This document shows positions 39,775 through 52,680 of a DNA stretch of 64,000 nucleotides, in pieces. The number at the start of each line of letters is the position of its first letter. The stretch's first letter is position 1. Source of the stretch: Pecten maximus (lineage: Eukaryota); NCBI RefSeq assembly GCF_902652985.1, contig NC_047021.1, positions 32,860,001 to 32,924,000 of the forward strand, read 5' to 3'. The position numbers and the translations under genes were made by a program. The notes under the pieces are model-generated. The model was given only the letters and a program-made list of their open reading frames with translations. It had not been told where the DNA came from and searched no databases.

Positions 39775-42700
39775 ATGGGATCGTTAACCACGCTGTCTCT
39801 CTACCTGGGTTTGACCGCCTTCACCATTGATGCAGGTAAGCTATAATTATATATATTCTAATTAAAAATTGTATCTCACCATGATATCTTTTTTTAAGTC
39901 ATAATGCCTCTTGGTTTCTTACTTCTATAATCATTATAGAAAATTGGAAATTTTATTTTGAACGCATACTTTTATCTTCACACATGTATTTGTACTGTAC
40001 TTTGAATAAGAAAGTTATTTTTCTAGTATGGATACTAAAATTTTAAATTTGGATTTTCTATTTTAACGTTTAAAACGTAAATATTATCAAGGTCCTATCA
40101 GCCTTTAAGGACCCTATTCTATTTTGTTGAATGAGACAAAAACGCAGACCTTCATCGTGGTTTATCGAGTCGCTACCACGGGGACTTGGTATAAATACCT
40201 AACTCACAGACTAGTATCATTGTCGGAAACACTCGGATCTCTTTTTGTAGTTTGAGTCCCGGTACTCGAAGGACAAGAGGAGTTCCGACGGGGTGTTGGT
40301 ATATATGTAGTATCAATATATTATTATACACACAAATGGACAGTGGGTTTAGTGATGTGTATCAAGTCCATGTGGGCCATGCTTTTATGCTGTATATATG
40401 TGTATTAGACTTATTTTCAAATCCCAGTATTTGGTATGTGCGTTCACAGGGACTTGACAAAAATTCCAACCGGAAAATATACCATGCATAACATACATTT
40501 GTATATAAAAAGTCCCTGTGTGTGAAATATTTTCCATGAACTTTAAGATATATCTGTATTTGCCTAGCGATATTTAGGTTTTTGTCCTGATAATTCCATC
40601 GCCGGAGAGGTCAAACATTAAAATAAATATTGATATTTTATTGCAGGAACTACGGTAGCACAAATAGGACTGTAACAATTGGTTTATAATGACGTAATAG
40701 ATATACTATGTTTTCATCTGTTTAAATGTTACGGCACAAATATTGACGCTAAAACACATGATACACAGATCGCGATGTCCCGTCACACAGTTTAAAACAA
40801 ATTTAACGGGAGAGCATCACAGCTTTGTAATCTACTTTACTCAACCTTTCCAGTGCAAAAAGACACAGGCGTTTGGATATACTAAAATTTATCTTCGAAT
40901 CTTATATATTCACGTTTACACATTATGAAGACTCTAAATCAGGGACTTGACACGGGTTTCAAATCCACTGTCGAATCAATATATGTTACATGTAAACATA
41001 TAATAATTGATAAATGGACTTTGGATTACGAACCCCTGTGATTTCTAGCAATCACATAACAACATCATACGAGCCCCTGTGATCTCTAGCAATCGGACAA
41101 CCACATCGTTCCAGTGAAAACTATTGTTTCACATTTAATGCCATGCTCACTGTCAATCCGTTATTTTAAAAATAAATAGTTTAAACTCAAGCGCCCGTGA
41201 AAAATATTGAAACCATTTCAGATTTCAAGATTTAAAGTAAAAACTCGTCACATATTTTTTATCGGTTACGATTATTGGTTTGCGATTTGATCCATTTTAG
41301 GCGAAGTTCGTGGCTATCATATTTTGATGCAGTGGTTGCATTGTTTTAAGTGTTTTTAGAGCGGATGGGCTGGCCGGCCATTTGTGTACGGGAAATCGAT
41401 CATTACGGGGGAGTAAGGGTGTCATTTCGGTTTAAGTTTAGGAGGAAGTGACTTCTGTCCATTAGAACTGTTTCTATATATGTCACAAAAAGAAAACGAG
41501 GAGTAGGCCACTTAAAATAATATACATGTGTATATTGCTGCTACCCACGCATTATCGCATTACTGACCGAGAATCTCTCAAGATTGTTTTGTATATGTGG
41601 AAAGCTTGGTATAAATATAGCTACAATTTAAATAAAAAAAACTGCCTCTTATTCCCTTTATCCATAAATAAGTACTTGACGTCTTTGTTATGTTTCATCT
41701 AGATCAGTTTAAACCACTTGTCAGAACTCGGCTAATTCCGTAACTACATCCATACGGAAAATTGCAACATCTCGGCCAATTATAAAGCTCGAGCCGAATT
41801 GTCTGAGTGCATCAGGCGAGGTTGGGCGAATTGTTGAAATCGTGTTATCTCGTCGATTCCGTTAAAGAACGGAGTTTGACGGAATCGTTAAACGATATTA
41901 AGAACTCTTCTGTTTTTATGTCCTTTTCCTGTTTAGTTATGTATTATGTCCTTTTTTTTATGATTAGTTAGGTATAATTTTGTCCTTTTTATGTTTTGTT
42001 CTGTTTTATTTTATGTCCTATTTTGTTTGGTTAGGTTTCATTCATATCTTATTTACATAATAAGGTCATTTACGGACGGTGTCAATCAATATTTTGGCCA
42101 TTCGAACGCTTTTATAGTGCCGTCTCACTGAAATTTCACACATGGACACGGAAGCGTGACGCAGTACCGACAACGGACGAACCGTAGTCCTTACCGCCAA
42201 TGTTTAGACATGCTGTCATTGTTGTTTATAATCAATTGTTTTTGCAGTGTCATCTGGCTTATATGAACAGGTACTTGGGATGACCAGCGCTGGTAAGTTA
42301 AGATGTAATGATACCATCTTTCTTTGACCAAATTAAAAAAAAAAAAAATCAAATGTTTTTTGTTCTTTAAGTTATTAAAGCCCCCTATAAAAAAAAAAAA
42401 AAAAAAATACCACCAGAACTTTCCAATTTTATGAATAATTTTATATATGTCACCACTGCAGTCATGATACATGTATTTTTTTTTTTATACCTTTCATGAT
42501 TAAGCTTTTAGAGGATTACCCTATATTGTTTGGGAACATACTGATTAAGTTTTCACAAATTAGTTTTATTCGGGCGCGTAGCATATTTAACGATAAATTA
42601 TAAGCATTGGACGGCCAAAGAACTGCAGAGAAGACACCAACTTTACACCTAATTTCTGTTGAATTCTCTGGTCAATATGATGTGATGTTAAAATTCATGG

Positions 42701-45700
42701 ATTTCCATATTTCCACAGAAATCTGTCAGAATCATACTGTTTTGAACGACAAATGGCGAAAAATAGGAAGCCAAAGGGGAGACAACTGTGACTCCCACAT
42801 CCAGGAAGGCTGGTATCGGTTGACGACAACAGATGGATACTCGTCGTCTCTTCCTACGACATGTGTTAAAGTAACGTCATATTAAATATAATTGATAGAG
42901 TTTATATCTTATCGAACTTAAGGGGTTACGTAACATTTAAGTCTACCTTTTCATGCGTATTATGACGTCAGACCAAAGGACAAATCACTGCAATGCTTGT
43001 GTGAATTTTATAATACAAGTATACATATTATATCAAAAGCTTCAACCTATCGTCAAGGTAGTTATTTGTATTATAGGATTCGGGTGCGTACCTCATATAG
43101 GTCTTCATGGAAAATAAAACTTAATAGTAAGAAGTGTTTCACTTTTCACATTTTAAATATGAGGGTAAAAGGTCATAGCTGTGCGCAACTTTGCTATGTC
43201 ACAGAGAAGTTGTGATGATTTGATGATTGTATGACGCGTTCTGATTGGCTTACAGAATCACGTGTGTGGACTGGTCGTTGCTATGTGGTTAGATATCCAG
43301 GGTGAGGATTTACCCCAGCCTGGCCACACGGTCCCCGGGTTCGTCTGTGGCTCTTACCCAGTATTAAGGATGTGGCAGTGTTGTGTCGTCAAGGAAACAG
43401 CATTTGTTCACAACTGTGGCAACTACTTCGTCTATTGGCTCCGCCCAACTGACAGATGCAGTGTGGGATATTGCGGTGAAGGTAAGGAATATAATTTCGT
43501 ACTTGTTTGGAAAATATATTTGGATTTTAAAATTTATTACAGAATGGCCGTCACATAAAACAAATGTTACCTATATACAGTTCAAAATAATACTATGCAA
43601 TGAATAATGATATTTTGCGCGTTCAATCAAAATAAGCATGGTTTATTACCATAAAGTATAGTTCTTGGGAGAGGGAAATCATCTACTGTAAACAAGCATA
43701 TTTTTTTGCGTACTCAAATTTTTAGCGCATTATCAAAGTATAACAGATCGGCTCAATCATGAATTGTCGTATCGACAATAAATCATGAATTGTCGTATAG
43801 ACAATAAATCATGAATTGTCGTATAGACAATAAATCATAAATTGTCGTATCGACAATAAATCATGAATTGTCGTATAGACAATAAATCATGAATTGTCGT
43901 ATAGACAATAAATCATGAATTGTCGTATAGACAATAAATCATGAATTGTATAGACAATAAATCATGAATTGTCGTATCAACGATAAATCATGAATTGTCG
44001 TATAGACAATAAATCATGAATTGTATAGACAATAAATCATGAATTGTCGTATCAACAATAAATCATGAATTGTCGTATAGACAATAAATCATGAATTGTA
44101 TAGACAATAAATCATGAATTGTCGTATCAACAATAAATCATGAATTGTCGTATAGACAATGAATCATGAATTGTCGTATAGACAATAAATCATGAATTGT
44201 CGTATAGACAATAAATCATGAATTGTCGTATAGACAATAAATCATGAATTGTATAGACAATAAATCATGAATTGTCGTATCAACAATAAATCATGAATTG
44301 TCGTATAGACAATAAATCATGAATTGTCGTATAGACAATAAATCATGAATTGTCGTATAGACAATAAATCATGAATTTTCGTATAGACAATAAATCATGA
44401 ATTGTCGTATAGACAATAAATCATGAATTGTCGTATAGACAATAAATCATGAATTGTATAGACAATAAATCATAAATTGTCGTATCAACAATAAATCATG
44501 AATTGTCGTATAGACAATAAATCATGAATTGTCGTATCGACAATAAATCATGAATAGTCGTATAGACAATAAATCATGAATTGTCGTATAGACAATAAAT
44601 CATGAATTGTCGTATAGACAATAAATCATAAATTGTCGTATAGACAATAAATCATGAATTGTATCGACAATAAATCATGAATAGTCGTATCGACAACAAA
44701 TAATGAATTGTCCTATCGACAATAAATTAAAAGCATTGAGAGACACAAGGAAACTTCATTTAATGTAATAAAAATTTAGTGTGATGAAGATTACTGCCAA
44801 TTTGAAAGTATGTACGGTTATAGTATTATGATCTTTTCTCCATCATGTGAAAATGAAAACAACTTATTCAAAACAGCCGTCAATTTTCGAAAGGAATATT
44901 TATAAAAGAAACACAATTATAACGTTTATAAAGTCACGATGAATACATTTTGCAATACAAGGCGTTAACGTACATGTATGGTAGCTGTTTATTTCCCTGT
45001 GTATTTTACAGGACCCCAGAGTGACATATCACCATACACAGTGAAGACCGGGGAGCCAGCCGCTGAAGCAAGCGACAGATTCAGGAGACGACTTCGTCCG
45101 ATCACAATTGACGACATAACCAGTGAACACACTGATATAGATGGCAGATCGATCAGGGATGTCTCTACTCCAGGTAATACTGATGCATTCTACAGAGAAC
45201 AAAGCCGTGTTATAGATTACATTGTCTGTGATGTTCATCTGTTCGACAGAGAAATAGAACAATGCTTTAGTTCATATCGTCACGGTGACTTCACTGCTGT
45301 TCCCTTAATCTCTAGGTACTGTTTTCATTTGACCTTAGTTGCTTGATGACATAAATTAAAACAAAATGAAGTATTTTTTCTTGCTGTTTTTGTTAACACC
45401 GTTATATTTTGAGACCGTCAATGCTGTTTTCCGTTTTATTTTGGTGTCTCATTTGTTCCTGTTTGAAGGTAATTTCATTTTGAAACTCAACGTTGTTTTC
45501 ATTATGTCATTTATAGACAGTAATGTTATCTTTATAGGTTGGTAGATTTGTTTTTGGTAATGTTAATTTGATATCGACAATGTTGTCTTTCCTTTTGTTT
45601 TGGTGTTGTGTATTGTGTGATGGTAAAGTTAATTTGATACCGACAATGTTGTTTTTCCTTTTGTTTTGGTGTTGTGTATTGTGTGATGGTAAAGTTAATT

Positions 45701-48700
45701 TGATACCGACAATGTTGTCTTTCCTTTTGTTTTGGTGTTGTGTATTGTGTGATGGTAAAGTTAATTTGATTCCGACAATGTTGTTTTTCCTTCTGTTTCG
45801 GTGTTGCATATGCTTATGGTTTAATCCTATATTGCACGCTGATGTTAACAGTATTGTTCATATCTGTCTATCATCCTGTTATTTAAATAACGCATTAGCA
45901 TAGTCGAAATCAAAACTTCAAATGGGTTAACGGTTAATACTCACTGACGTTAAAATATGTTTTAGACGACCATCTGCCTTGTCCAGAAGGTCAGACCAGA
46001 TGTCCAAACAGTGTCTGTGTTGCCTCCAATCACCTTTGTAGCTCAGGTCAGTTCTATCTCACATGGATGCGTAATGTCCAAAAAACAAATATATGTAGAG
46101 CTTGAGGTCATCCAGTTAAAGGTTAAGGTTAAACCTTTTTTGAATTATTTATATATATATATTATTATTTTTTTTTTTTATGGTAAGTCTTTTGGATTCA
46201 AATGATGAATTTTGTTAACCAAGGTTGGTGCCAATGTTACGCCTATGTCAAAGCAGTGGAGTTAAGACTAATGATACTGTTGATATTTTAATGGTAACGA
46301 GAATTGCTAATCAGGGTTATGATGTGTTTAATATGTCTATTTTGGTGATAATTGTATCTGATGTGTAAGTTTGAAATGTTTAAGATATTTTCACAGATGA
46401 ATCTACGTCTATTTCACAACCTACAACTACCTACGTGACCCGCACACCGATCACGTTCTATTTCTCGGTGTTACGTGATAGGACGAGACCACCTGTGAGC
46501 CTCACATCCGGACAACCAGTCGTAGCAGCTCAGACACACGTGGAGAGGAATACTGAGGGTAGGCCTGATAGTGAGGCATTTTCTAAGGAAGAAGACACGA
46601 AACGAATGCTCTTCAGTGGTGATTTGACGCCAACAACTACAAATGAAATGACGGCAACTGCTGGAAAATTAACTATTCCTAGTTCCACCTTGTTGACAGA
46701 TTCTTCTAGAGAAAATGAACGTTCCTTACCAACGCCTATTCCAAGGTCCTCAAATAGTTATAATTTGTCGAAAACCACGCGTGTCTCAACTAGTGAAGGT
46801 CAGAGGTCAGTGTTCATCCAGGCCTATTACACCAACCAACTAACGGCTTCAATGACGTCAACATTAAAAGCTAATTTGACTACGGTTACAAGCACATTTG
46901 TCGATGAATCCTTTCTCTCTTCAACCGCCATTAATAGCGATTATGGCAGTCTAGATACTAACAATCACCTAGGACTTGATACGATGTCTCAATTACCGCC
47001 AAAACAAACAAGTTCTTGTAGCTCTTGTCTTGAACCGTCCATTACGTCATTACCAGTGATGATGAAGGAAATGACAAACACCGATTATTTAGCTGATAGG
47101 GCTTCTCTTGATCTTAAAACTCATGAAAGTATTTCATCGCCTGCAATGGTAAAGGAACCGATATCATCCATAGCTCTAACGACACCTTCTTCTAGAATCA
47201 TTCCACCATCTGCTAGTTTTGTGCTAGAACCGAGTACTTCAAGCGTTGTACAACACCCAATATCTTCAACCGTTTTGTATTTGCCTTCGACTTCTTCAAT
47301 AGATGCGTCTTCGCAAATTTCACATATGCCGTACTCTACACCCAAAGCACTCTTCAAGTGATTTAAAAAACACGCCTTCAACATCTGCATCGTACAACGT
47401 GGCCTATTCCACTTCTTCACCGGACACGCCCCCATTACAACCAATGACAGTATCGAGTGCTGGACCGCAGTCTAAGCGTCCTACTCTATCGACATCAGTC
47501 ACACCTGATGTGGTTACGTCCAAGATGGCCACAGTGACATCTCCTTCTTTTGGCACTACTGGTGATAGATGTACCAAATGCATTGAGGTAGTCTTCAACC
47601 TCCGTGTGACTATCAAAGACAAACAAGTAGGTCTGCATGTGTACAGAGTAGGTTCCTAGAATACATATGTAGTTTTCTTCTGTCTACGTGGTACTAATTT
47701 TATTTTTCAAAAGTGAAATGAATTCAAAATGACATGGGCATGGTTGTTACTCTCTTTGCTTACTGATGTATATTCTGTTTCTAAACTATTTACCGATAGA
47801 CATTTGCCTCAAAACACATGTTATATTGGTTTTCATTGAATGACAATATTGCATGACAAATGGCTTCGGTTATACGATCATTTTAATATTTAGGGGATAA
47901 CCCTTTACGTGGTTTTGAACCTGTGACTGTATATCTGGATATTGCAGTCGCAAATTGAATTTTATGCGCCAATAGTCTAGTTTTGAAGGAAGATCATCCC
48001 ATTCTAAATTCACGCTAATTCAAGGGTTGAACCTGTTCGCTTTTCGTAGCTTTGCCAACGATTGCTGAAACCTGTAACCTCAATTGAACGTTTTGTTTAC
48101 ACTGTCGTTGATGACGTTTCGCAGTCATTCTGGGTCATTAATCGCTATATGTTTAAGCAATGTCAGTTTGTAAATTAATACTATTAATGGCTTCTGGTGT
48201 CCTGGGCAAAACACAAGAAAATCTCAATAGCACACAAATTGAGCCGAAAATCAGCATGTAAAGGGATGGCCTAGCGTCTTTGGAAATTTCAAAACTGACA
48301 GGTGACTTATAATTATTGCGACTGAAAAATAAACTTATATACCATTTTCTTTTCTTATTATTGTTAATTCTGTTATTTTACAGACTGAACAAGAATTTCA
48401 GGTATCCGTCCAAACAGCGTTTTCAATGATGCTTACTCGATTTTATGGACACCGGTTCAGGCGTGACTTAAGGAATGCAACAAACCCTCAACGAAACAGC
48501 ACTCACTTCTTGCCCTCAGATGTTCACATACGGAACACGACATCGATGGGCAACATCGTAGTTCTGTTGTTGGAAGTTAAACACCCATTAGGTAAAGATA
48601 TTAAAATTGGAATTTATCGCAAAGATATCGGTAAAGATAAGTGAATATTGCTTCCTCCGACTTGATAATATTGAAAAATATTACCAACTATGGAGTATTA

Positions 48701-50820
48701 ATGAATTTCACTTTCATAGTTACCTTTTTTTCCAGGCAGAGTTCTGTATCTATTTTGTACGAATTAATTTCATTTCTTAGCTTTATCGTCTAAATATTCA
48801 CTAACACATTTTGTAGGTGACTTCGTGCACAATCAATATCTCGAATACCTGCTACAGAAGAGTGAGGCCAGGCTATCGTTAGAGCAAGACGTAAGTTATT
48901 TATCATACACATAATTTGTGCCTTCTAAAAAAAAAAAAAAAAAAAATCCCTAAAACAGCAAAACAAAACAAAACTGTAAAACAGAAGAAAAAAAAGAACA
49001 AAAAATGATTCCGGGGTGCCGGTAGTTCATCCTGTGCGTCTGCCTCGTGCAACATAACACGTGATCAGCGTTTTTATAGTTCAGTGACTCTAGTCACCAA
49101 TTGACTAAACTATCAATTCACAGTCAAATTTAAACCAGGTCTGTTATGCATTTTCTTCTAACTTCTCATGAAGAGAATTTGCGGATAAAACGTTATATTT
49201 AGGTGTAGTTTGAAGAATGTCTATAGAATATGTTCACTTCAAATTTGATTTTAATTTTACCACAGCAAGAACTCTGATAGAGTAGACAATATTTTTCTCG
49301 CGTCTAGAGAACAGTGACATTTTTGGGGTAAAAACATTATCTTTAGATGAATGTTTAGAATTTGTGTGTTTACGACATTGGTAAAACGTTTTGCAATGCA
49401 GCGATATATTTACACATTGTTGTAGGTATATAGAGGTTGGTAATATCTTGTACTAACATGAAAGTTTCTTTGATAGCTTCTATGAAAAAATAGACATTTA
49501 GTGATTGCCGGAGTTTGCTTATAGATTGCATGAACCTTTCTGACAAATGTTATTATATATTAAACTTATGGGTTGTACTGTAACCAGGTACATCTACTGA
49601 AGTAAAACTCGATTCATGTATATAAAAACTTTATTTTTGAACGGTTCCCTTTTATTTTAACTTTCATGAGAAAGCGATTTTCGTTGGTGATTAAGGATTG
49701 AATCCCTTACATATCCACAAACCTGCATGTATTACATCAGTGCAGTGGACCTGAGAAGTTCTGATTCTCACACAATATAAACAATATTTCATAGCTCTCT
49801 ACATTGTCATAGAAGCACCAACATAGTATAGGATTTCGGGGGAAATGATTATCAGTTATTTCATTCTTCGCTTTAATCCAGCTAAGTGTCTACGGGGCAA
49901 CCTTGACCGAGTTCTCTGTGCCTGACAATCCGTCCACAGACACACCACGACCAGGGGACGAGAGCGGTGCAACATCAATCTTCGCTCAACACTTTGGCCT
50001 CTTTCTTACGGTCATCATTCTGTCGAGCTTTGTGGCGTGTGCTGGTGTGATTGCCATGATATATCTTCGGAACAAGGCGAGGACAGGGATGTGGTACTGT
50101 CCATCTGGTACTCGCTACGCTAAACAAGTATGTATTCTACTTATCATTTCCATCTGGTCAGTGACCTATTTGAAATCAAATGACTATGATTTCGTCGGAT
50201 ATCCGAAAAGTGCATCAATGATTTTGCAGATTTGATCTCCTTAAATGGCTTTGGTATTGATTCAAGAACATTTTCTAAAATATTTTGAATAAGGTTTTAG
50301 TCTCTCTCTGAAATTGTTCATTGTTTCATAGTAGCTCTTTACTTCCGTTAAGAATACAGATTTTCTTCTGTCCTTTAGCGTGAGATTGAAAGCAATCTTC
50401 CATGTTCAGCTTGAAATTGTTAGTTGGTACTCATGGTTTAGCTCGCTATTACTCGTATGAAATATGATATTACAAATATGTCGAATAAATGAAGCTTAAA
50501 CACAGAATGCGATACTCCTACTGTATGTCCTTTTGACATTGTGTTGTATCTCTCCTCAGTTGGAGCGCACCTTACTGACCAAAACTACAAACTGGCGGGT
50601 AGGTCACATGACCAATCCCATTCCAGACGTCGACATACTCCACGGCGAGGACCCAATGACTGAGACCACCGAAGAAGAAAATAGCAGTCACCGCGCGTCG
50701 TGCACAGGTGACAGGACAAGCAGAGAGGGCAGCTGTCCTGAAGTTGATACATGGGTGGTCCCCCTTGGAGATGGAATGGACGAAGGACTAGCAGACGAAG
50801 AGTATGACACGCGTCTGTAA
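39775..50820 (+). CDS. Type I membrane sialomucin: signal peptide, UMOD/GP2/OIT3-like D8C domain, small Cys module, S/T mucin stalk, SEA-like region, TM helix, podocalyxin/CD34-like tail; about 914 aa if the +1 frameshift near 47340 is corrected. Exons 39775-39835, 42248-42292, 42719-42870, 43256-43481, 45012-45173, 45966-46046, 46397-47626, 48384-48591, 48817-48890, 49882-50127, 50560-50820
   Basis: All junctions are GT-AG and phase-compatible. D8C motifs CD..IQEGWYR..LPTTCV..CG..MWL..CC..VHNCGNYFVYWLRP..C..GYC; TM helix FGLFLTVIILSSFVACAGVIAMIYL; C-terminus DTWVVPL..DEEYDTRL. Confidence 0.82.
43755..44728. repeat. 26-bp quasi-palindromic satellite (GACAATAAATCATGAATTGTCGTATA), about 37 copies, with 23-bp variants
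   Basis: TCATGA recurs at 43861, 43887 and 43913. Confidence 0.97.
45555..45806. repeat. 66-bp T-rich tandem repeat, about 3.7 copies
   Basis: Direct repetition, seen as 22-aa periodicity in spurious ORFs. Confidence 0.9.
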
Positions 50821-51614
50821 GAACAATGCCAGTACTCCAAAAATACATATCGTCCATACTTAAGGTATAATTCGTATTTGGTATGGAAAGGATGTCACCC
50901 TTCATAAGATGTTAACAGTATGTTCCATTCATAGTTTCCTCGTATTTAAAGAACATGCGTCATATATCATTCAGGGACTATATTCGGGTGACCATTGCGT
51001 TGAGATTATGTACATGTACATGAAAATCGAGTGTTTTTCTATCCATTCTTTGATTAAAATATAGATGAAATCTGCAATAGAAACAGCGTGACAGTATTTT
51101 GAATGATCAACCATATATGTCTTAATTGACCACACAATCAATGAATGATATATACTCAGGAGTTTAAAAAAAATGTGGTTTAATGTTTTAATAAGAATGA
51201 AAGCGTCCCTTCACTTAGACGTGGACTTTTTTGTGGTATCATATAGTGACAGCTGTGGATAGTGCTTAACGACGGCTATACAGAATCTGACTAAGAGTTG
51301 CTTCCCTTGTAATGCAACTTAGTTTGACCTAACCTATGAAACATTAGTACGATTCTCCTTTTCGAATACTGAATTTACCAGCTTCGTATACCAGTGTATA
51401 ATTCACGAAAGAATATTTTGACATAACTTGGTTTAGAATTTGATCTCCTGAAATGGGTTTGATATTGATTCAAGAAAAATTTCTGAAATATTTTGAATAA
51501 GAATTTAGTCTCTCTATGATATTGTTCATTGCTAATTTGTAGTTCTTCACTTCCGTTAAGAGCGCGGGGTTTCTTCTGTCCTTAAGCGTAAGATTGAAAA
51601 CAATCTCCCATGTT
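50230..51614. repeat. Diverged direct repeat of about 175 bp (50230-50405 and 51438-51614) flanking the last coding exon
   Basis: ATTTGATCTCCT..AAATATTTTGAATAAG..ACTTCCGTTAAGA..TTCTTCTGTCCTT..CCATGTT is present twice. Confidence 0.85.
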
Positions 51615-52394
51615 TATCAAACTTGATAATACCACATAATAAGTGTATCAAGCACAGCTGTTTAAGATTATCTGACTATAATTTTACTATTTTATATTTT
51701 TTATTGTGATGCCAAAATTCATTTATTTTACATCATGAGTGTTTTTTATTAGAATAGTATTATCCCCAAAACATAAAGAATATAACCTTTACTATATTAC
51801 TGTTAATGTTTTATTTGCATATTCATAAACAAATTATTCTAAATCAAATCAAAACAACTAGATGACATGCCAATATGTTGGGTAAGGTGGACTTAAGAAA
51901 TGTCTTTTCTATCCTTAACTATAAAACCCGATCTTATTTGTAGTTTGACTGTAATTTGGTAATAAATGTTGTCACAAAGTCAAAATCTTAAAGAAAGAAA
52001 CTATCATAAAGTATCAACCCATTGAATACCGAATGTCCATTTAAGAGTATTAAAGATATTAAAGATTTTAATGTATAACGTTGCTCTGTATATAACTGTA
52101 CATGTATATAGTGTAATTTCGTGGATATGTTATCTTAGATAGAAATAATAATCATTGACAACAAAATGTAATTTCAAGTGTTTGACATGCATATTTAAGT
52201 TATTTTAACGTATAATCATATACAATGTATGTATTTAAATATATCAATGGTTGTGCTATTTGTAATCTTCTTTAGAAAGAGACCCCACACACATTCCTTG
52301 AGACTTATTAAATAATTCAGCTGATTCGTGGCTTCATTTGAAGTAACATGGGGGTAACCTAATGGCGGATCTGATAATTGGCAGAATTGGTTAA

Positions 52395-52680
52395 GTATCA
52401 TACTTCTCCAACCAGTGGGGCTCGTCATTAAGATTTATACTTCTCCAACCAGTGGTGCTCGTCATTAAGATTTATACTTCTCCAACCAGTGGTGCTCGTC
52501 ATTAAGGGTCATACTTCTCCAACTAGTAGTGTTTCTCATAAGGATCATACTTCTCCAACTAGTAGTGCTTGTCATAAGGATCATACTTCTCCAACAAGTG
52601 ATGCTTGTCATAAGGGTAATACTTCTCCAACTAGTAGTGCTTGTCATAAGGTTCACACCTCTCCAACCAGTGGTGCCTTG
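52395..52680. repeat. 36/37-bp tandem repeat (ATACTTCTCCAACCAGTGGTGCTCGTCAT..), about 8 copies
   Basis: Directly visible periodicity. Confidence 0.9.

What the first reader, a model, noticed from the sequence alone, without database searches (positions are those of the whole stretch)
50560..50820. Invertebrate sialomucin with a podocalyxin/CD34-family cytoplasmic tail
Seen: the tail contains GHMTNPIPDV and ends DTWVVPLGDGMDEGLADEEYDTRL. From memory, vertebrate podocalyxin has GYHDNPTLEV and ends DSWIVPLDNLTKDDLDEEEDTHL, a class I PDZ ligand for NHERF. Motif order and the overall layout (mucin stalk, Cys-containing globular region, TM helix) also match. The CD34 family is usually treated as vertebrate. 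Inference: a lophotrochozoan homologue, possibly a podocyte or haemocyte apical protein.
Basis: partly seen in the sequence, partly recalled or inferred. Interest (0 to 1): 0.8.

Follow-up and report, generated by a model that had tools for sequence, protein, structure and literature searches.

The report
Scallop membrane mucin, podocalyxin-like tail
The stretch is the last coding exon of an expressed king-scallop membrane mucin whose conserved cytoplasmic tail carries the same short motifs, in the same order, as vertebrate podocalyxin, but no search method here could show that it belongs to the podocalyxin/CD34 family.

Summary
Observation confirmed. Window 50560-50820 (+) is the terminal exon of Pecten maximus LOC117330622. 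It encodes the quoted GHMTNPIPDV and the ending DTWVVPLGDGMDEGLADEEYDTRL-stop. RNA contigs show the predicted splice joints. The protein has a signal peptide, D8C head, LDLa-like module, Ser/Thr/Pro-rich stalk, predicted SEA-like membrane-adjacent domain, TM helix and a 106-residue disordered tail.

Relatives were found only in four scallop genera. There the tail (75% identity) is far better kept than the mucin stalk (40%), and VDTWV[VI]PL and EYDTRL are invariant. The scallop block D-T-W-V-V-P-L lies 17 residues from a class I PDZ ligand, against D-S-W-I-V-P-L at 16 residues in dog podocalyxin.

Every formal homology test was negative. Pfam CD34_antigen gave no hit on the exons, the full-length orthologues or the whole genome. 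phmmer of the tail against 1.84 billion proteins found scallops only. Language-model look-alikes listed podocalyxin only at noise level.

Verdict: a scallop SEA-type membrane mucin that probably works like podocalyxin through PDZ docking. Descent from a shared ancestor is plausible (about 0.35) but unproven.

The parts
39775..39835 (+). Exon 1: start codon and signal peptide (MGSLTTLSLYLGLTAFTIDA), followed by donor GTAAGC
   Evidence: tblastn of the Mizuhopecten orthologue P0006 residues 1-17, 88% identity; sequence read
42719..42870 (+). D8C head, first exon (EICQNHTVLNDKW...PTTCVK)
   Evidence: tblastn to P0003/P0006, 75-83% identity. The orthologues carry Pfam D8C_UMOD PF23283 in the precomputed annotation and score 16-18 bits in my own scan, below the 27-bit cut-off
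43255..43482 (+). D8C head, second exon (NHVCG...CSVGYCGEG)
45011..45172 (+). Linker exon with a basic RFRRR site; spliced to 45965
   Evidence: tblastn. The loose ends of RNA contigs at 45964 carry the last letters of this exon (table 7)
45965..46048 (+). Small Cys-rich LDL-receptor-class-A-like exon (CPEGQTRCPNSVCVASNHLC)
   Evidence: tblastn; weak Pfam Ldl_recept_a match on orthologue P0003, E 0.039; covered by RNA contigs
46397..47626 (+). Large Ser/Thr/Pro-rich mucin exon. It ends with the CxxC pair and the first strand of the globular domain. The assembly has one base too many near 47347, which breaks the frame
   Evidence: ORFs 46435-47361 and 47303-47659 lie in two frames. The transcript contig of run X2 leaves out 1 letter at 47347 (table 4). 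In the orthologues the reading frame is continuous and S+T+P is 37-41%
48384..48591 (+). Globular SEA-like domain, main exon: helix 1, a loop with RFRR at 48453-48464, and the beta hairpin SMGNIVVLLLEV
   Evidence: RNA joints 47626/48384 and 48591/48817; AF2 model; fold matches
48817..48890 (+). Globular SEA-like domain, helix 2 exon
   Evidence: RNA joint (run X18); AF2 model
49882..50127 (+). Last strand of the globular domain, 20-residue stalk, TM helix (49993-50067) and the basic juxtamembrane segment RNKARTGMWYCPSGTRYAKQ. Phase-0 donor at 50128
   Evidence: RNA joint 50127/50560; AF2 helix 235-269 of P0001; the juxtamembrane segment is invariant except one K/N and one I/T change in four scallop genera
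50560..50820 (+). The finding: terminal coding exon, 86 residues of cytoplasmic tail plus the stop codon. Conserved motifs are T.PIPDVDIL at 50611-50640, MTET at 50656-50667, DTWVVPL at 50746-50766 and EYDTRL at 50800-50817
50821..51557 (+). 3' untranslated region, as far as transcript contigs reach
   Evidence: contigs 14-16 of run X2 cover 50565-51557 (table 8)

Best explanation
What is shown: this is the tail exon of an expressed type I membrane mucin, conserved across scallops (Pecten maximus LOC117330622). The ectodomain is signal peptide, D8C head, LDLa-like module, a Ser/Thr/Pro-rich stalk of about 400 residues, and a non-autocleaving SEA-like membrane-adjacent domain. A single TM helix follows, then a disordered tail of about 106 residues. 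In the tail, short linear motifs are under strong purifying selection.

What is inferred: the extreme C-terminus -D-T-R-L is a class I PDZ ligand of the NHERF/EBP50-binding type. The invariant block V-D-T-W-V-[VI]-P-L, 17 residues upstream, is a second docking site. The basic juxtamembrane helix is a possible ERM contact. The protein would then work like podocalyxin: a bulky O-glycosylated, anti-adhesive surface coat held at an apical or free cell surface by a PDZ scaffold linked to cortical actin.

Relation to podocalyxin: the resemblance is real at the level of motifs, their order and their spacing. It is too weak for any profile or sequence search to register, so I do not file the protein in the CD34 family. 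Whether the shared tail reflects eroded common descent or convergence on the same partners stays open.
For: Gene and expression:
- Splice joints 47626/48384, 48591/48817 and 50127/50560 are seen in RNA contigs of three runs from different studies.

Domains:
- AF2 gives a beta-alpha-beta-beta-alpha-beta domain with pLDDT 85-93, a TM helix, and a tail with pLDDT below 50.

Conservation:
- Orthologues exist in Ylistrum, Argopecten and Mizuhopecten.
- Identity by region is 40% for the mucin stalk, 64% for the SEA-like domain, 78% for the TM helix and 75% for the tail.
- T.PIPDVDIL, MTET, VDTWV[VI]PL and EYDTRL are invariant.

Podocalyxin side:
- The dog tail printed in PMC4862332 has, in the same order..NPTLEV, METSSE and DSWIVPL, with 16 residues to ...EEDTHL.
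- The scallop has ..NPIPDV, MTETTE and DTWVVPL, with 17 residues to ...EYDTRL.
- Over the last 23-24 residues I count 12 identities by eye, with one 1-residue gap.
- In vertebrates too, the TM and tail are the best-conserved parts (PMC2193439), and DTHL is the PDZ docking site.

Uniqueness:
- The motif pair occurs once in the genome.
Against: - No PDZ, NHERF or ERM binding was tested.
- A search for the NHERF-specific EBP50_C family in the scallop genome was uninformative.
- The tissue and the membrane domain of expression are unknown.
- O-glycosylation is inferred from composition only.
- Pfam, phmmer and the language-model atlas give no significant link to podocalyxin.
- D-T-x-L ends preceded by acidic residues arise repeatedly in unrelated proteins. 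CFTR ends DTRL (my own knowledge).
Confidence: 0.5

Rival explanations
1. It is a true homologue by descent of the vertebrate CD34/podocalyxin/endoglycan family. The ancestral bilaterian gene already had the build mucin, SEA-like globular domain, TM helix and a tail with the W-x-V-P-L block and a D-T-x-L end. Scallops added, or vertebrates lost, the D8C/LDLa head.
For: - Four colinear tail motifs with nearly the same spacing to the C-terminus.
- A seven-residue block with 5 identities and 2 conservative changes is more than typical convergent linear motifs share.
- The domain order from the mucin exon onward is the same, and mucin, globular, TM and tail parts lie in separate 3' exons as in the 8-exon vertebrate genes.
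- The tail and TM are the conserved parts in both lineages.
- A podocalyxin-fragment cluster turns up in both language-model searches, at rank 14 (0.83) and rank 6 (0.79), with the highest shared-feature count of the rows listed in the second.
- From my own memory, not checked here: Pei and Grishin (Protein Sci 2017) classed the CD34 globular domain as a divergent SEA domain.
- Three vertebrate paralogues imply a single pre-vertebrate ancestor gene.
Against: - PF06365 gives no hit at E<=10 on the exons, the full-length orthologues or the genome.
- phmmer finds no vertebrate protein.
- The atlas scores are in the range that shuffled proteins reach.
- No relative was found outside Pectinidae, so there is no chain of intermediates.
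- The D8C/LDLa head and the count of at least 11 exons differ from the family.
- The first motif and the acidic run are not invariant in scallops.
Confidence: 0.35
2. The likeness to podocalyxin is coincidence plus a generic acidic PDZ-ligand end. The tail serves other partners and the protein has no functional parallel with podocalyxin beyond being a membrane mucin.
For: - All formal searches are negative.
- The scan looks at very many proteins, and a reader can recall many famous tails, so some striking short matches are expected.
- By my hand estimate (not a tool result), the C-terminal block alone is worth only about 25 bits, which is not significant in a proteome-wide search.
Against: - The matching residues are exactly the ones that scallops keep invariant: VDTWV[VI]PL and DTRL.
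- The match has the right position (extreme C-terminus), the right spacing (17 against 16 residues) and the right protein context (mucin, membrane-adjacent globular domain, TM).
- The motif occurs once in a long ORF in 918 Mb.
Confidence: 0.15

Closest known systems
Podocalyxin (PODXL) and endoglycan (PODXL2), CD34 family, vertebrates
   Same: - Type I protein with a Ser/Thr/Pro-rich stalk, a globular domain next to the membrane, a short stalk, one TM helix and a tail of about 75-105 residues. The tail is the best-conserved part.
- Tail motifs come in the same order..NP...[DE]V, M(T)ET..E and D[ST]W[IV]VPL, then 16-17 mostly acidic residues and a class I PDZ ligand DT[HR]L at the C-terminus.
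   Different: - No Pfam CD34_antigen match and no sequence-search link.
- An extra D8C head and LDLa-like module at the N-terminus.
- At least 11 exons against 8.
- A 17-residue longer spacer between the second and third motifs.
- Only two cysteines (CxxC) at the edge of the globular domain, against 1-3 pairs.
- Known only from scallops.
SEA-domain membrane mucins (MUC1, MUC13, MUC16 type)
   Same: - A mucin stalk followed by a beta-alpha-beta-beta-alpha-beta domain directly before the TM helix.
   Different: - No Pfam SEA hit.
- The hairpin reads G-N-I-V-V, or N-N-V-V in Ylistrum, instead of the self-cleaving G-S-V-V-V. Autoproteolysis is therefore unlikely.
Uromodulin-type D8C proteins
   Same: An N-terminal eight-cysteine D8C domain (precomputed PF23283 on all orthologues; 16-18 bits).
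   Different: No EGF or ZP module. The D8C domain is followed instead by a mucin stalk, an SEA-like domain and a TM helix.
CFTR-type NHERF ligands (C-terminal D-T-R-L)
   Same: The identical last four residues. This rests on my own knowledge of CFTR and was not checked here.
   Different: An unrelated polytopic channel. It shows only that DTRL ends evolve independently.

Membership tests
CD34/podocalyxin family (Pfam PF06365 CD34_antigen) | Significant match to the family profile | tested here: not met
   No hit at E<=10 on the tail, TM or globular exons, on the full-length orthologues P0001-P0003 or in a six-frame search of the whole scallop genome. HMMER filters drop hits weaker than about E 0.1-0.3, so a very weak local match is not excluded.
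CD34/podocalyxin family | Detectable pairwise sequence homology to a family member | tested here: not met
   phmmer of the 86-residue tail against 1.84e9 representative proteins gave 3 hits, all scallop. Word-based searches gave scallops only. A direct alignment to a vertebrate sequence could not be run, because no vertebrate sequence was available as a stored protein.
CD34/podocalyxin family | Extracellular Ser/Thr/Pro-rich mucin domain | tested here: met
   S+T+P is 37-41% over about 415-450 residues in the orthologues. Window exon 46397-47626. The domain is not N-terminal here: a D8C head and an LDLa-like module precede it.
CD34/podocalyxin family | Cysteine-bonded globular domain plus juxtamembrane stalk | tested here: inconclusive
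   A confident globular domain exists (pLDDT 85-93) with an SEA-like fold, one CxxC pair at its N-terminal edge and a 20-residue stalk. No CD34-family structure was available for comparison.
CD34/podocalyxin family | Single TM helix, and a cytoplasmic tail ending in a class I PDZ ligand (DTEL/DTHL) | tested here: met
   TM at 49993-50067. The tail ends DTRL, invariant in four scallop genera. DTEL/DTHL are the family motifs according to PMC10220851 and PMC2193439. The third residue differs (R).
Podocalyxin/endoglycan subgroup | Tail block D-S-W-I-V-P-L about 16 residues before the C-terminus | tested here: met
   The scallop has D-T-W-V-[VI]-P-L 17 residues before the C-terminus, invariant. The dog and human sequences come from papers. 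The comparison was made by eye, with no statistic.
CD34/podocalyxin family | Eight-exon gene with separate signal, mucin, globular, TM and tail exons | tested here: not met
   The scallop gene has at least 11 coding exons. Only the 3' half (mucin / globular x2 / TM / tail) parallels the vertebrate layout described in PMC2193439. Intron phases of the vertebrate genes were not available.
CD34/podocalyxin family | Heavy sialylation (sialomucin); binding of NHERF1/2 and ezrin | not testable with these tools
   Needs biochemistry. An EBP50_C search in the genome was uninformative.
SEA domain (Pfam PF01390) | Profile match; ferredoxin-like beta-alpha-beta-beta-alpha-beta fold; G/SVVV self-cleavage site | tested here: inconclusive

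The most novel reading that the evidence does not exclude
The scallop gene is the first recognisable non-vertebrate relative of podocalyxin/endoglycan. In that case the tail module (W-x-V-P-L block plus D-T-x-L PDZ ligand) and the build mucin, SEA-like domain, TM helix would predate the protostome-deuterostome split. The ancestral family member may have carried a D8C/LDLa head that vertebrates lost.
Probability: 0.35. Interest if true: 0.7.

Novelty: new variant of a known kind. Interest (0 to 1): 0.45.

Why it matters
Podocalyxin keeps kidney filtration slits and new lumens open, and marks stem cells and aggressive tumours. Its family is treated as vertebrate-only: I found no paper in the library describing an invertebrate relative.

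A mollusc protein with the same tail grammar would give two things. First, an outgroup showing which tail residues matter; the conserved W-x-V-P-L block has no assigned partner. Second, a handle on whether mollusc podocytes or rhogocytes use the same anti-adhesive coat as vertebrate podocytes.

If the likeness is convergent, it still points to a bipartite docking signal that has evolved twice. Either way, the domain combination D8C, LDLa, mucin, SEA-like, TM is undescribed, and the RefSeq model of the gene is truncated by an assembly frameshift.

Tried and rejected
1. Pfam scans of every exon and of the full-length orthologues found no CD34_antigen and no SEA, and only sub-threshold D8C and LDLa matches. 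One search failed because I gave the wrong frame.
2. PF06365 against the whole scallop genome: blank.
3. The tail against PDB sequences at E<=10: blank.
4. The word-index protein search with the tail exon found no candidates, because of the length filter. With the C-terminal 262 residues of P0003, and with the whole protein, it found scallops only.
5. phmmer over 1.84e9 proteins: scallops only.
6. Paralogue search in the genome by protein and by degenerate DNA pattern found none.
7. JGI metagenome scan for relatives in host-associated samples: 165 pattern hits, none confirmed.
8. The ESM atlas gave generic single-pass and SEA-like proteins first, with podocalyxin only at noise level.
9. EBP50_C (NHERF) in the genome: uninformative, and the control did not ring either.
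10. Literature searches for invertebrate podocalyxin found nothing. The Pei and Grishin SEA paper is not held.

Rejected readings:
- Pseudogene. The frameshift at 47347 is absent from the transcript contig, and the orthologues are intact.
- A stand-alone small ORF. The exon is spliced to the TM exon.
Full report
**The observation**

The + strand frame that opens at 50560, right after an acceptor AG at 50558-50559, encodes 86 residues and stops at 50818-50820. It contains the quoted GHMTNPIPDV (50602-50631) and ends DTWVVPLGDGMDEGLADEEYDTRL. Contigs of public runs laid on 45900-51800 show GT..AG joints at 47626/48384, 48591/48817 and 50127/50560. They cover the 3' UTR to about 51557. The stretch is therefore the terminal coding exon of a transcribed, spliced gene.

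**The gene**

An exact database look-up shows the window is Pecten maximus. The C-terminal 370 residues are RefSeq XP_033744940, 'uncharacterized protein LOC117330622' (P0001).

Mapping the full-length orthologues back onto the window, together with the RNA joints, gives these coding exons:
- Signal peptide, 39775-39835.
- Probably a small exon near 42244-42291 (weak match).
- Two D8C exons, 42719-42870 and 43255-43482.
- A linker exon, 45011-45172.
- A small LDLa-like exon, 45965-46048.
- A large Ser/Thr/Pro-rich exon, 46397-47626.
- Two globular-domain exons, 48384-48591 and 48817-48890.
- A stalk/TM exon, 49882-50127.
- The tail exon, 50560-50820.

The mucin exon reads in two frames in the assembly. 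The transcript contig of run X2 lacks one letter at 47347, which makes the frame continuous as in the orthologues. This is why the RefSeq model is truncated. It is an assembly error or an allele, not a dead gene.

Whole-protein steps used P0001 and the orthologues that the searches returned.

**Domains**

AlphaFold2 was run on P0001 with the scallop alignment. Residues 90-216 form a beta-alpha-beta-beta-alpha-beta domain (pLDDT 85-93). A long helix at 235-269 is the TM segment. The tail is disordered, with pLDDT below 50.

The domain's best structural matches come from two searches.
- Foldseek: additionally the collectrin-like neck plus TM of ACE2.

This is the divergent-SEA class of juxtamembrane domains. 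Pfam itself finds no SEA. The hairpin reads GNIVV rather than the self-cleaving GSVVV, and it varies among scallops, so autoproteolysis is unlikely. A basic RFRR site sits in the disordered loop of the domain.

The stalk is 37-41% Ser+Thr+Pro in the orthologues. The head is a D8C domain (precomputed PF23283; 16-18 bits against a cut-off of 27). A weak LDLa match follows it.

**Relatives and conservation**

- phmmer with the tail exon over 1.84 billion representative proteins found three proteins: the P. maximus protein itself, Ylistrum balloti and Argopecten irradians.
- Word-index searches with the C-terminal 262 residues, and with the whole Argopecten protein, added only Mizuhopecten yessoensis.
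- The scallop genome has no paralogue.
- A metagenome scan found no relative.

Within the four scallop genera, identity by region is as follows:

| Region | Identity |
|---|---|
| D8C head | 80% |
| Mucin stalk | 40% |
| SEA-like domain | 64% |
| TM helix | 78% |
| Tail | 75% |

Invariant tail elements are the juxtamembrane ARTGMWYCPSG.RYAKQLER.LLTKT, then T.PIPDVDIL.GE..MTET, VDTWV[VI]PL and EYDTRL. The depth is only one bivalve family.

**Comparison with podocalyxin**

PMC4862332 prints canine podocalyxin residues 501-571. PMC9633294 prints the human C-terminal peptide. Read by eye against these, the scallop tail shows the same order of elements:

| Element | Scallop | Dog podocalyxin |
|---|---|---|
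| First motif | ..NPIPDV | ..NPTLEV |
| Second motif | MTETTE | METSSE |
| Tail block | DTWVVPL | DSWIVPL |
| Residues from block to C-terminus | 17, mostly acidic | 16, mostly acidic |
| C-terminal end | EYDTRL | EEDTHL |

Over the last 23-24 residues I count 12 identities with one single-residue gap. My hand BLOSUM62 estimate is about 25 bits. That is an estimate, not a tool result.

Three things weaken the match:
- The DEE before YDTRL is specific to P. maximus; the others have DAE, DKE or NKE.
- The spacer between the second and third motifs is 17 residues longer in the scallop.

One thing strengthens it. The residues that do match are exactly those that scallops keep invariant, at the right place in the right kind of protein. 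The DNA pattern for the seven-residue block occurs 8 times in 918 Mb, against 18 for the reversed control. Only this copy lies in a long ORF ending in a PDZ ligand.

**Formal homology tests**

All were negative.
- Pfam CD34_antigen (PF06365) gives no hit at E<=10 on any exon, on the full-length orthologues or on the six-frame genome.
- phmmer finds no vertebrate protein. A match of about 25-30 bits could not have reached E 0.001 in a library of that size, so this is weak negative evidence.
- The tail finds nothing in the PDB.
- The language-model atlas put collectrin, PCDH15, SEA mucins and generic single-pass proteins first. A 'Podocalyxin (Fragment)' cluster came at rank 14 (0.83) and rank 6 (0.79), scores that shuffled proteins also reach.

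I could not run a direct alignment or a profile-profile comparison with vertebrate podocalyxin. No tool returned a vertebrate sequence as a stored protein, and I did not type the sequence from the paper into a call.

**Family membership**

Reviews define the CD34 family by a mucin domain, a cysteine-bonded globular domain, a stalk, a TM helix, a tail with a DTEL/DTHL PDZ site, and eight-exon genes.

- Met by the scallop protein: the mucin domain, the TM helix, the PDZ-ligand class, and the podocalyxin-type tail block.
- Undecided: the globular-domain criterion. The fold is SEA-like with one CxxC pair, and there is no family structure to compare with.
- Failed: the profile, the pairwise-homology and the exon-number criteria. 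The protein also adds a D8C/LDLa head foreign to the family.

From memory only, the CD34 globular domain has been classed as a divergent SEA domain (Pei and Grishin 2017). The paper is not held in the library, so I give this no weight beyond a lead. I therefore do not file the protein as a family member.

**How it most likely works**

Shown: an expressed type I protein with a long Ser/Thr/Pro-rich stalk, a folded membrane-adjacent domain and a disordered tail whose short motifs are under selection.

Inferred:
- The free C-terminus -T-R-L is a class I PDZ ligand (X-S/T-X-hydrophobic), of the D-T-x-L type that NHERF PDZ domains bind in podocalyxin.
- The W-V-V-P-L block is a second docking site of unknown partner.
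- The basic juxtamembrane helix may contact ERM proteins.

The protein would then be an anti-adhesive, glycocalyx-forming coat held at a free cell surface by a PDZ scaffold linked to actin. That is, it works like podocalyxin whether or not it is related to it.

Sialylation, the tissue (podocyte, haemocyte) and the partners are untested. The runs are coded and give no tissue.

**Verdict**

| Reading | Weight |
|---|---|
| Functional analogue whose relationship remains open | 0.5 |
| True descent from a common ancestor with the CD34 family | 0.35 |
| Coincidence | 0.15 |

No paper on an invertebrate podocalyxin relative was found. The domain combination itself is undescribed. The decisive computations are a profile-profile comparison and a motif-anchored scan of other invertebrate proteomes. 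Both are simple, but they could not be run with the sequences available here.

Noticed in passing
window 47340-47350: The assembly has one base more than the transcript contig of run X2 at 47347. This splits the mucin exon into two frames. It explains why the RefSeq model XP_033744940 starts at an internal Met and has only 370 residues, while the orthologues have 901-944.
   Followed up: partly
window 48453-48464 and 45080-45094: There are basic convertase-like sites. RFRR lies in the disordered loop of the SEA-like domain (RLKR, RFRR and RFYR in the other scallops). RFRRR lies in the linker after the D8C head. A furin-type cut inside an SEA-like domain would recall Notch S1 or IA-2 processing and could replace the missing G/SVVV self-cleavage.
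   Followed up: no
window 43755-44727: An intronic minisatellite of 38 copies of a 26-bp unit (AATCATGAATTGTCGTATAGACAATA), 91% matching, with a 153-bp higher-order period.
   Followed up: no
window 45555-45806: An intronic tandem repeat of 3.8 copies of a 66-bp unit, 95% matching. It creates spurious ORFs on both strands.
   Followed up: no
window 52398-52676: A tandem array of 7.7 copies of a 36-bp unit about 0.8 kb downstream of the gene's 3' UTR. It is open in several frames (for example HKDHTSPTSSAC repeats). It is not covered by the transcript contigs laid, which reached only to 51800.
   Followed up: no
P0005 (Argopecten irradians XP_069101539, 294 aa): A second, short A. irradians protein falls in the same 90% cluster as the full-length orthologue. 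It may be a partial duplicate or a fragment model.
   Followed up: no
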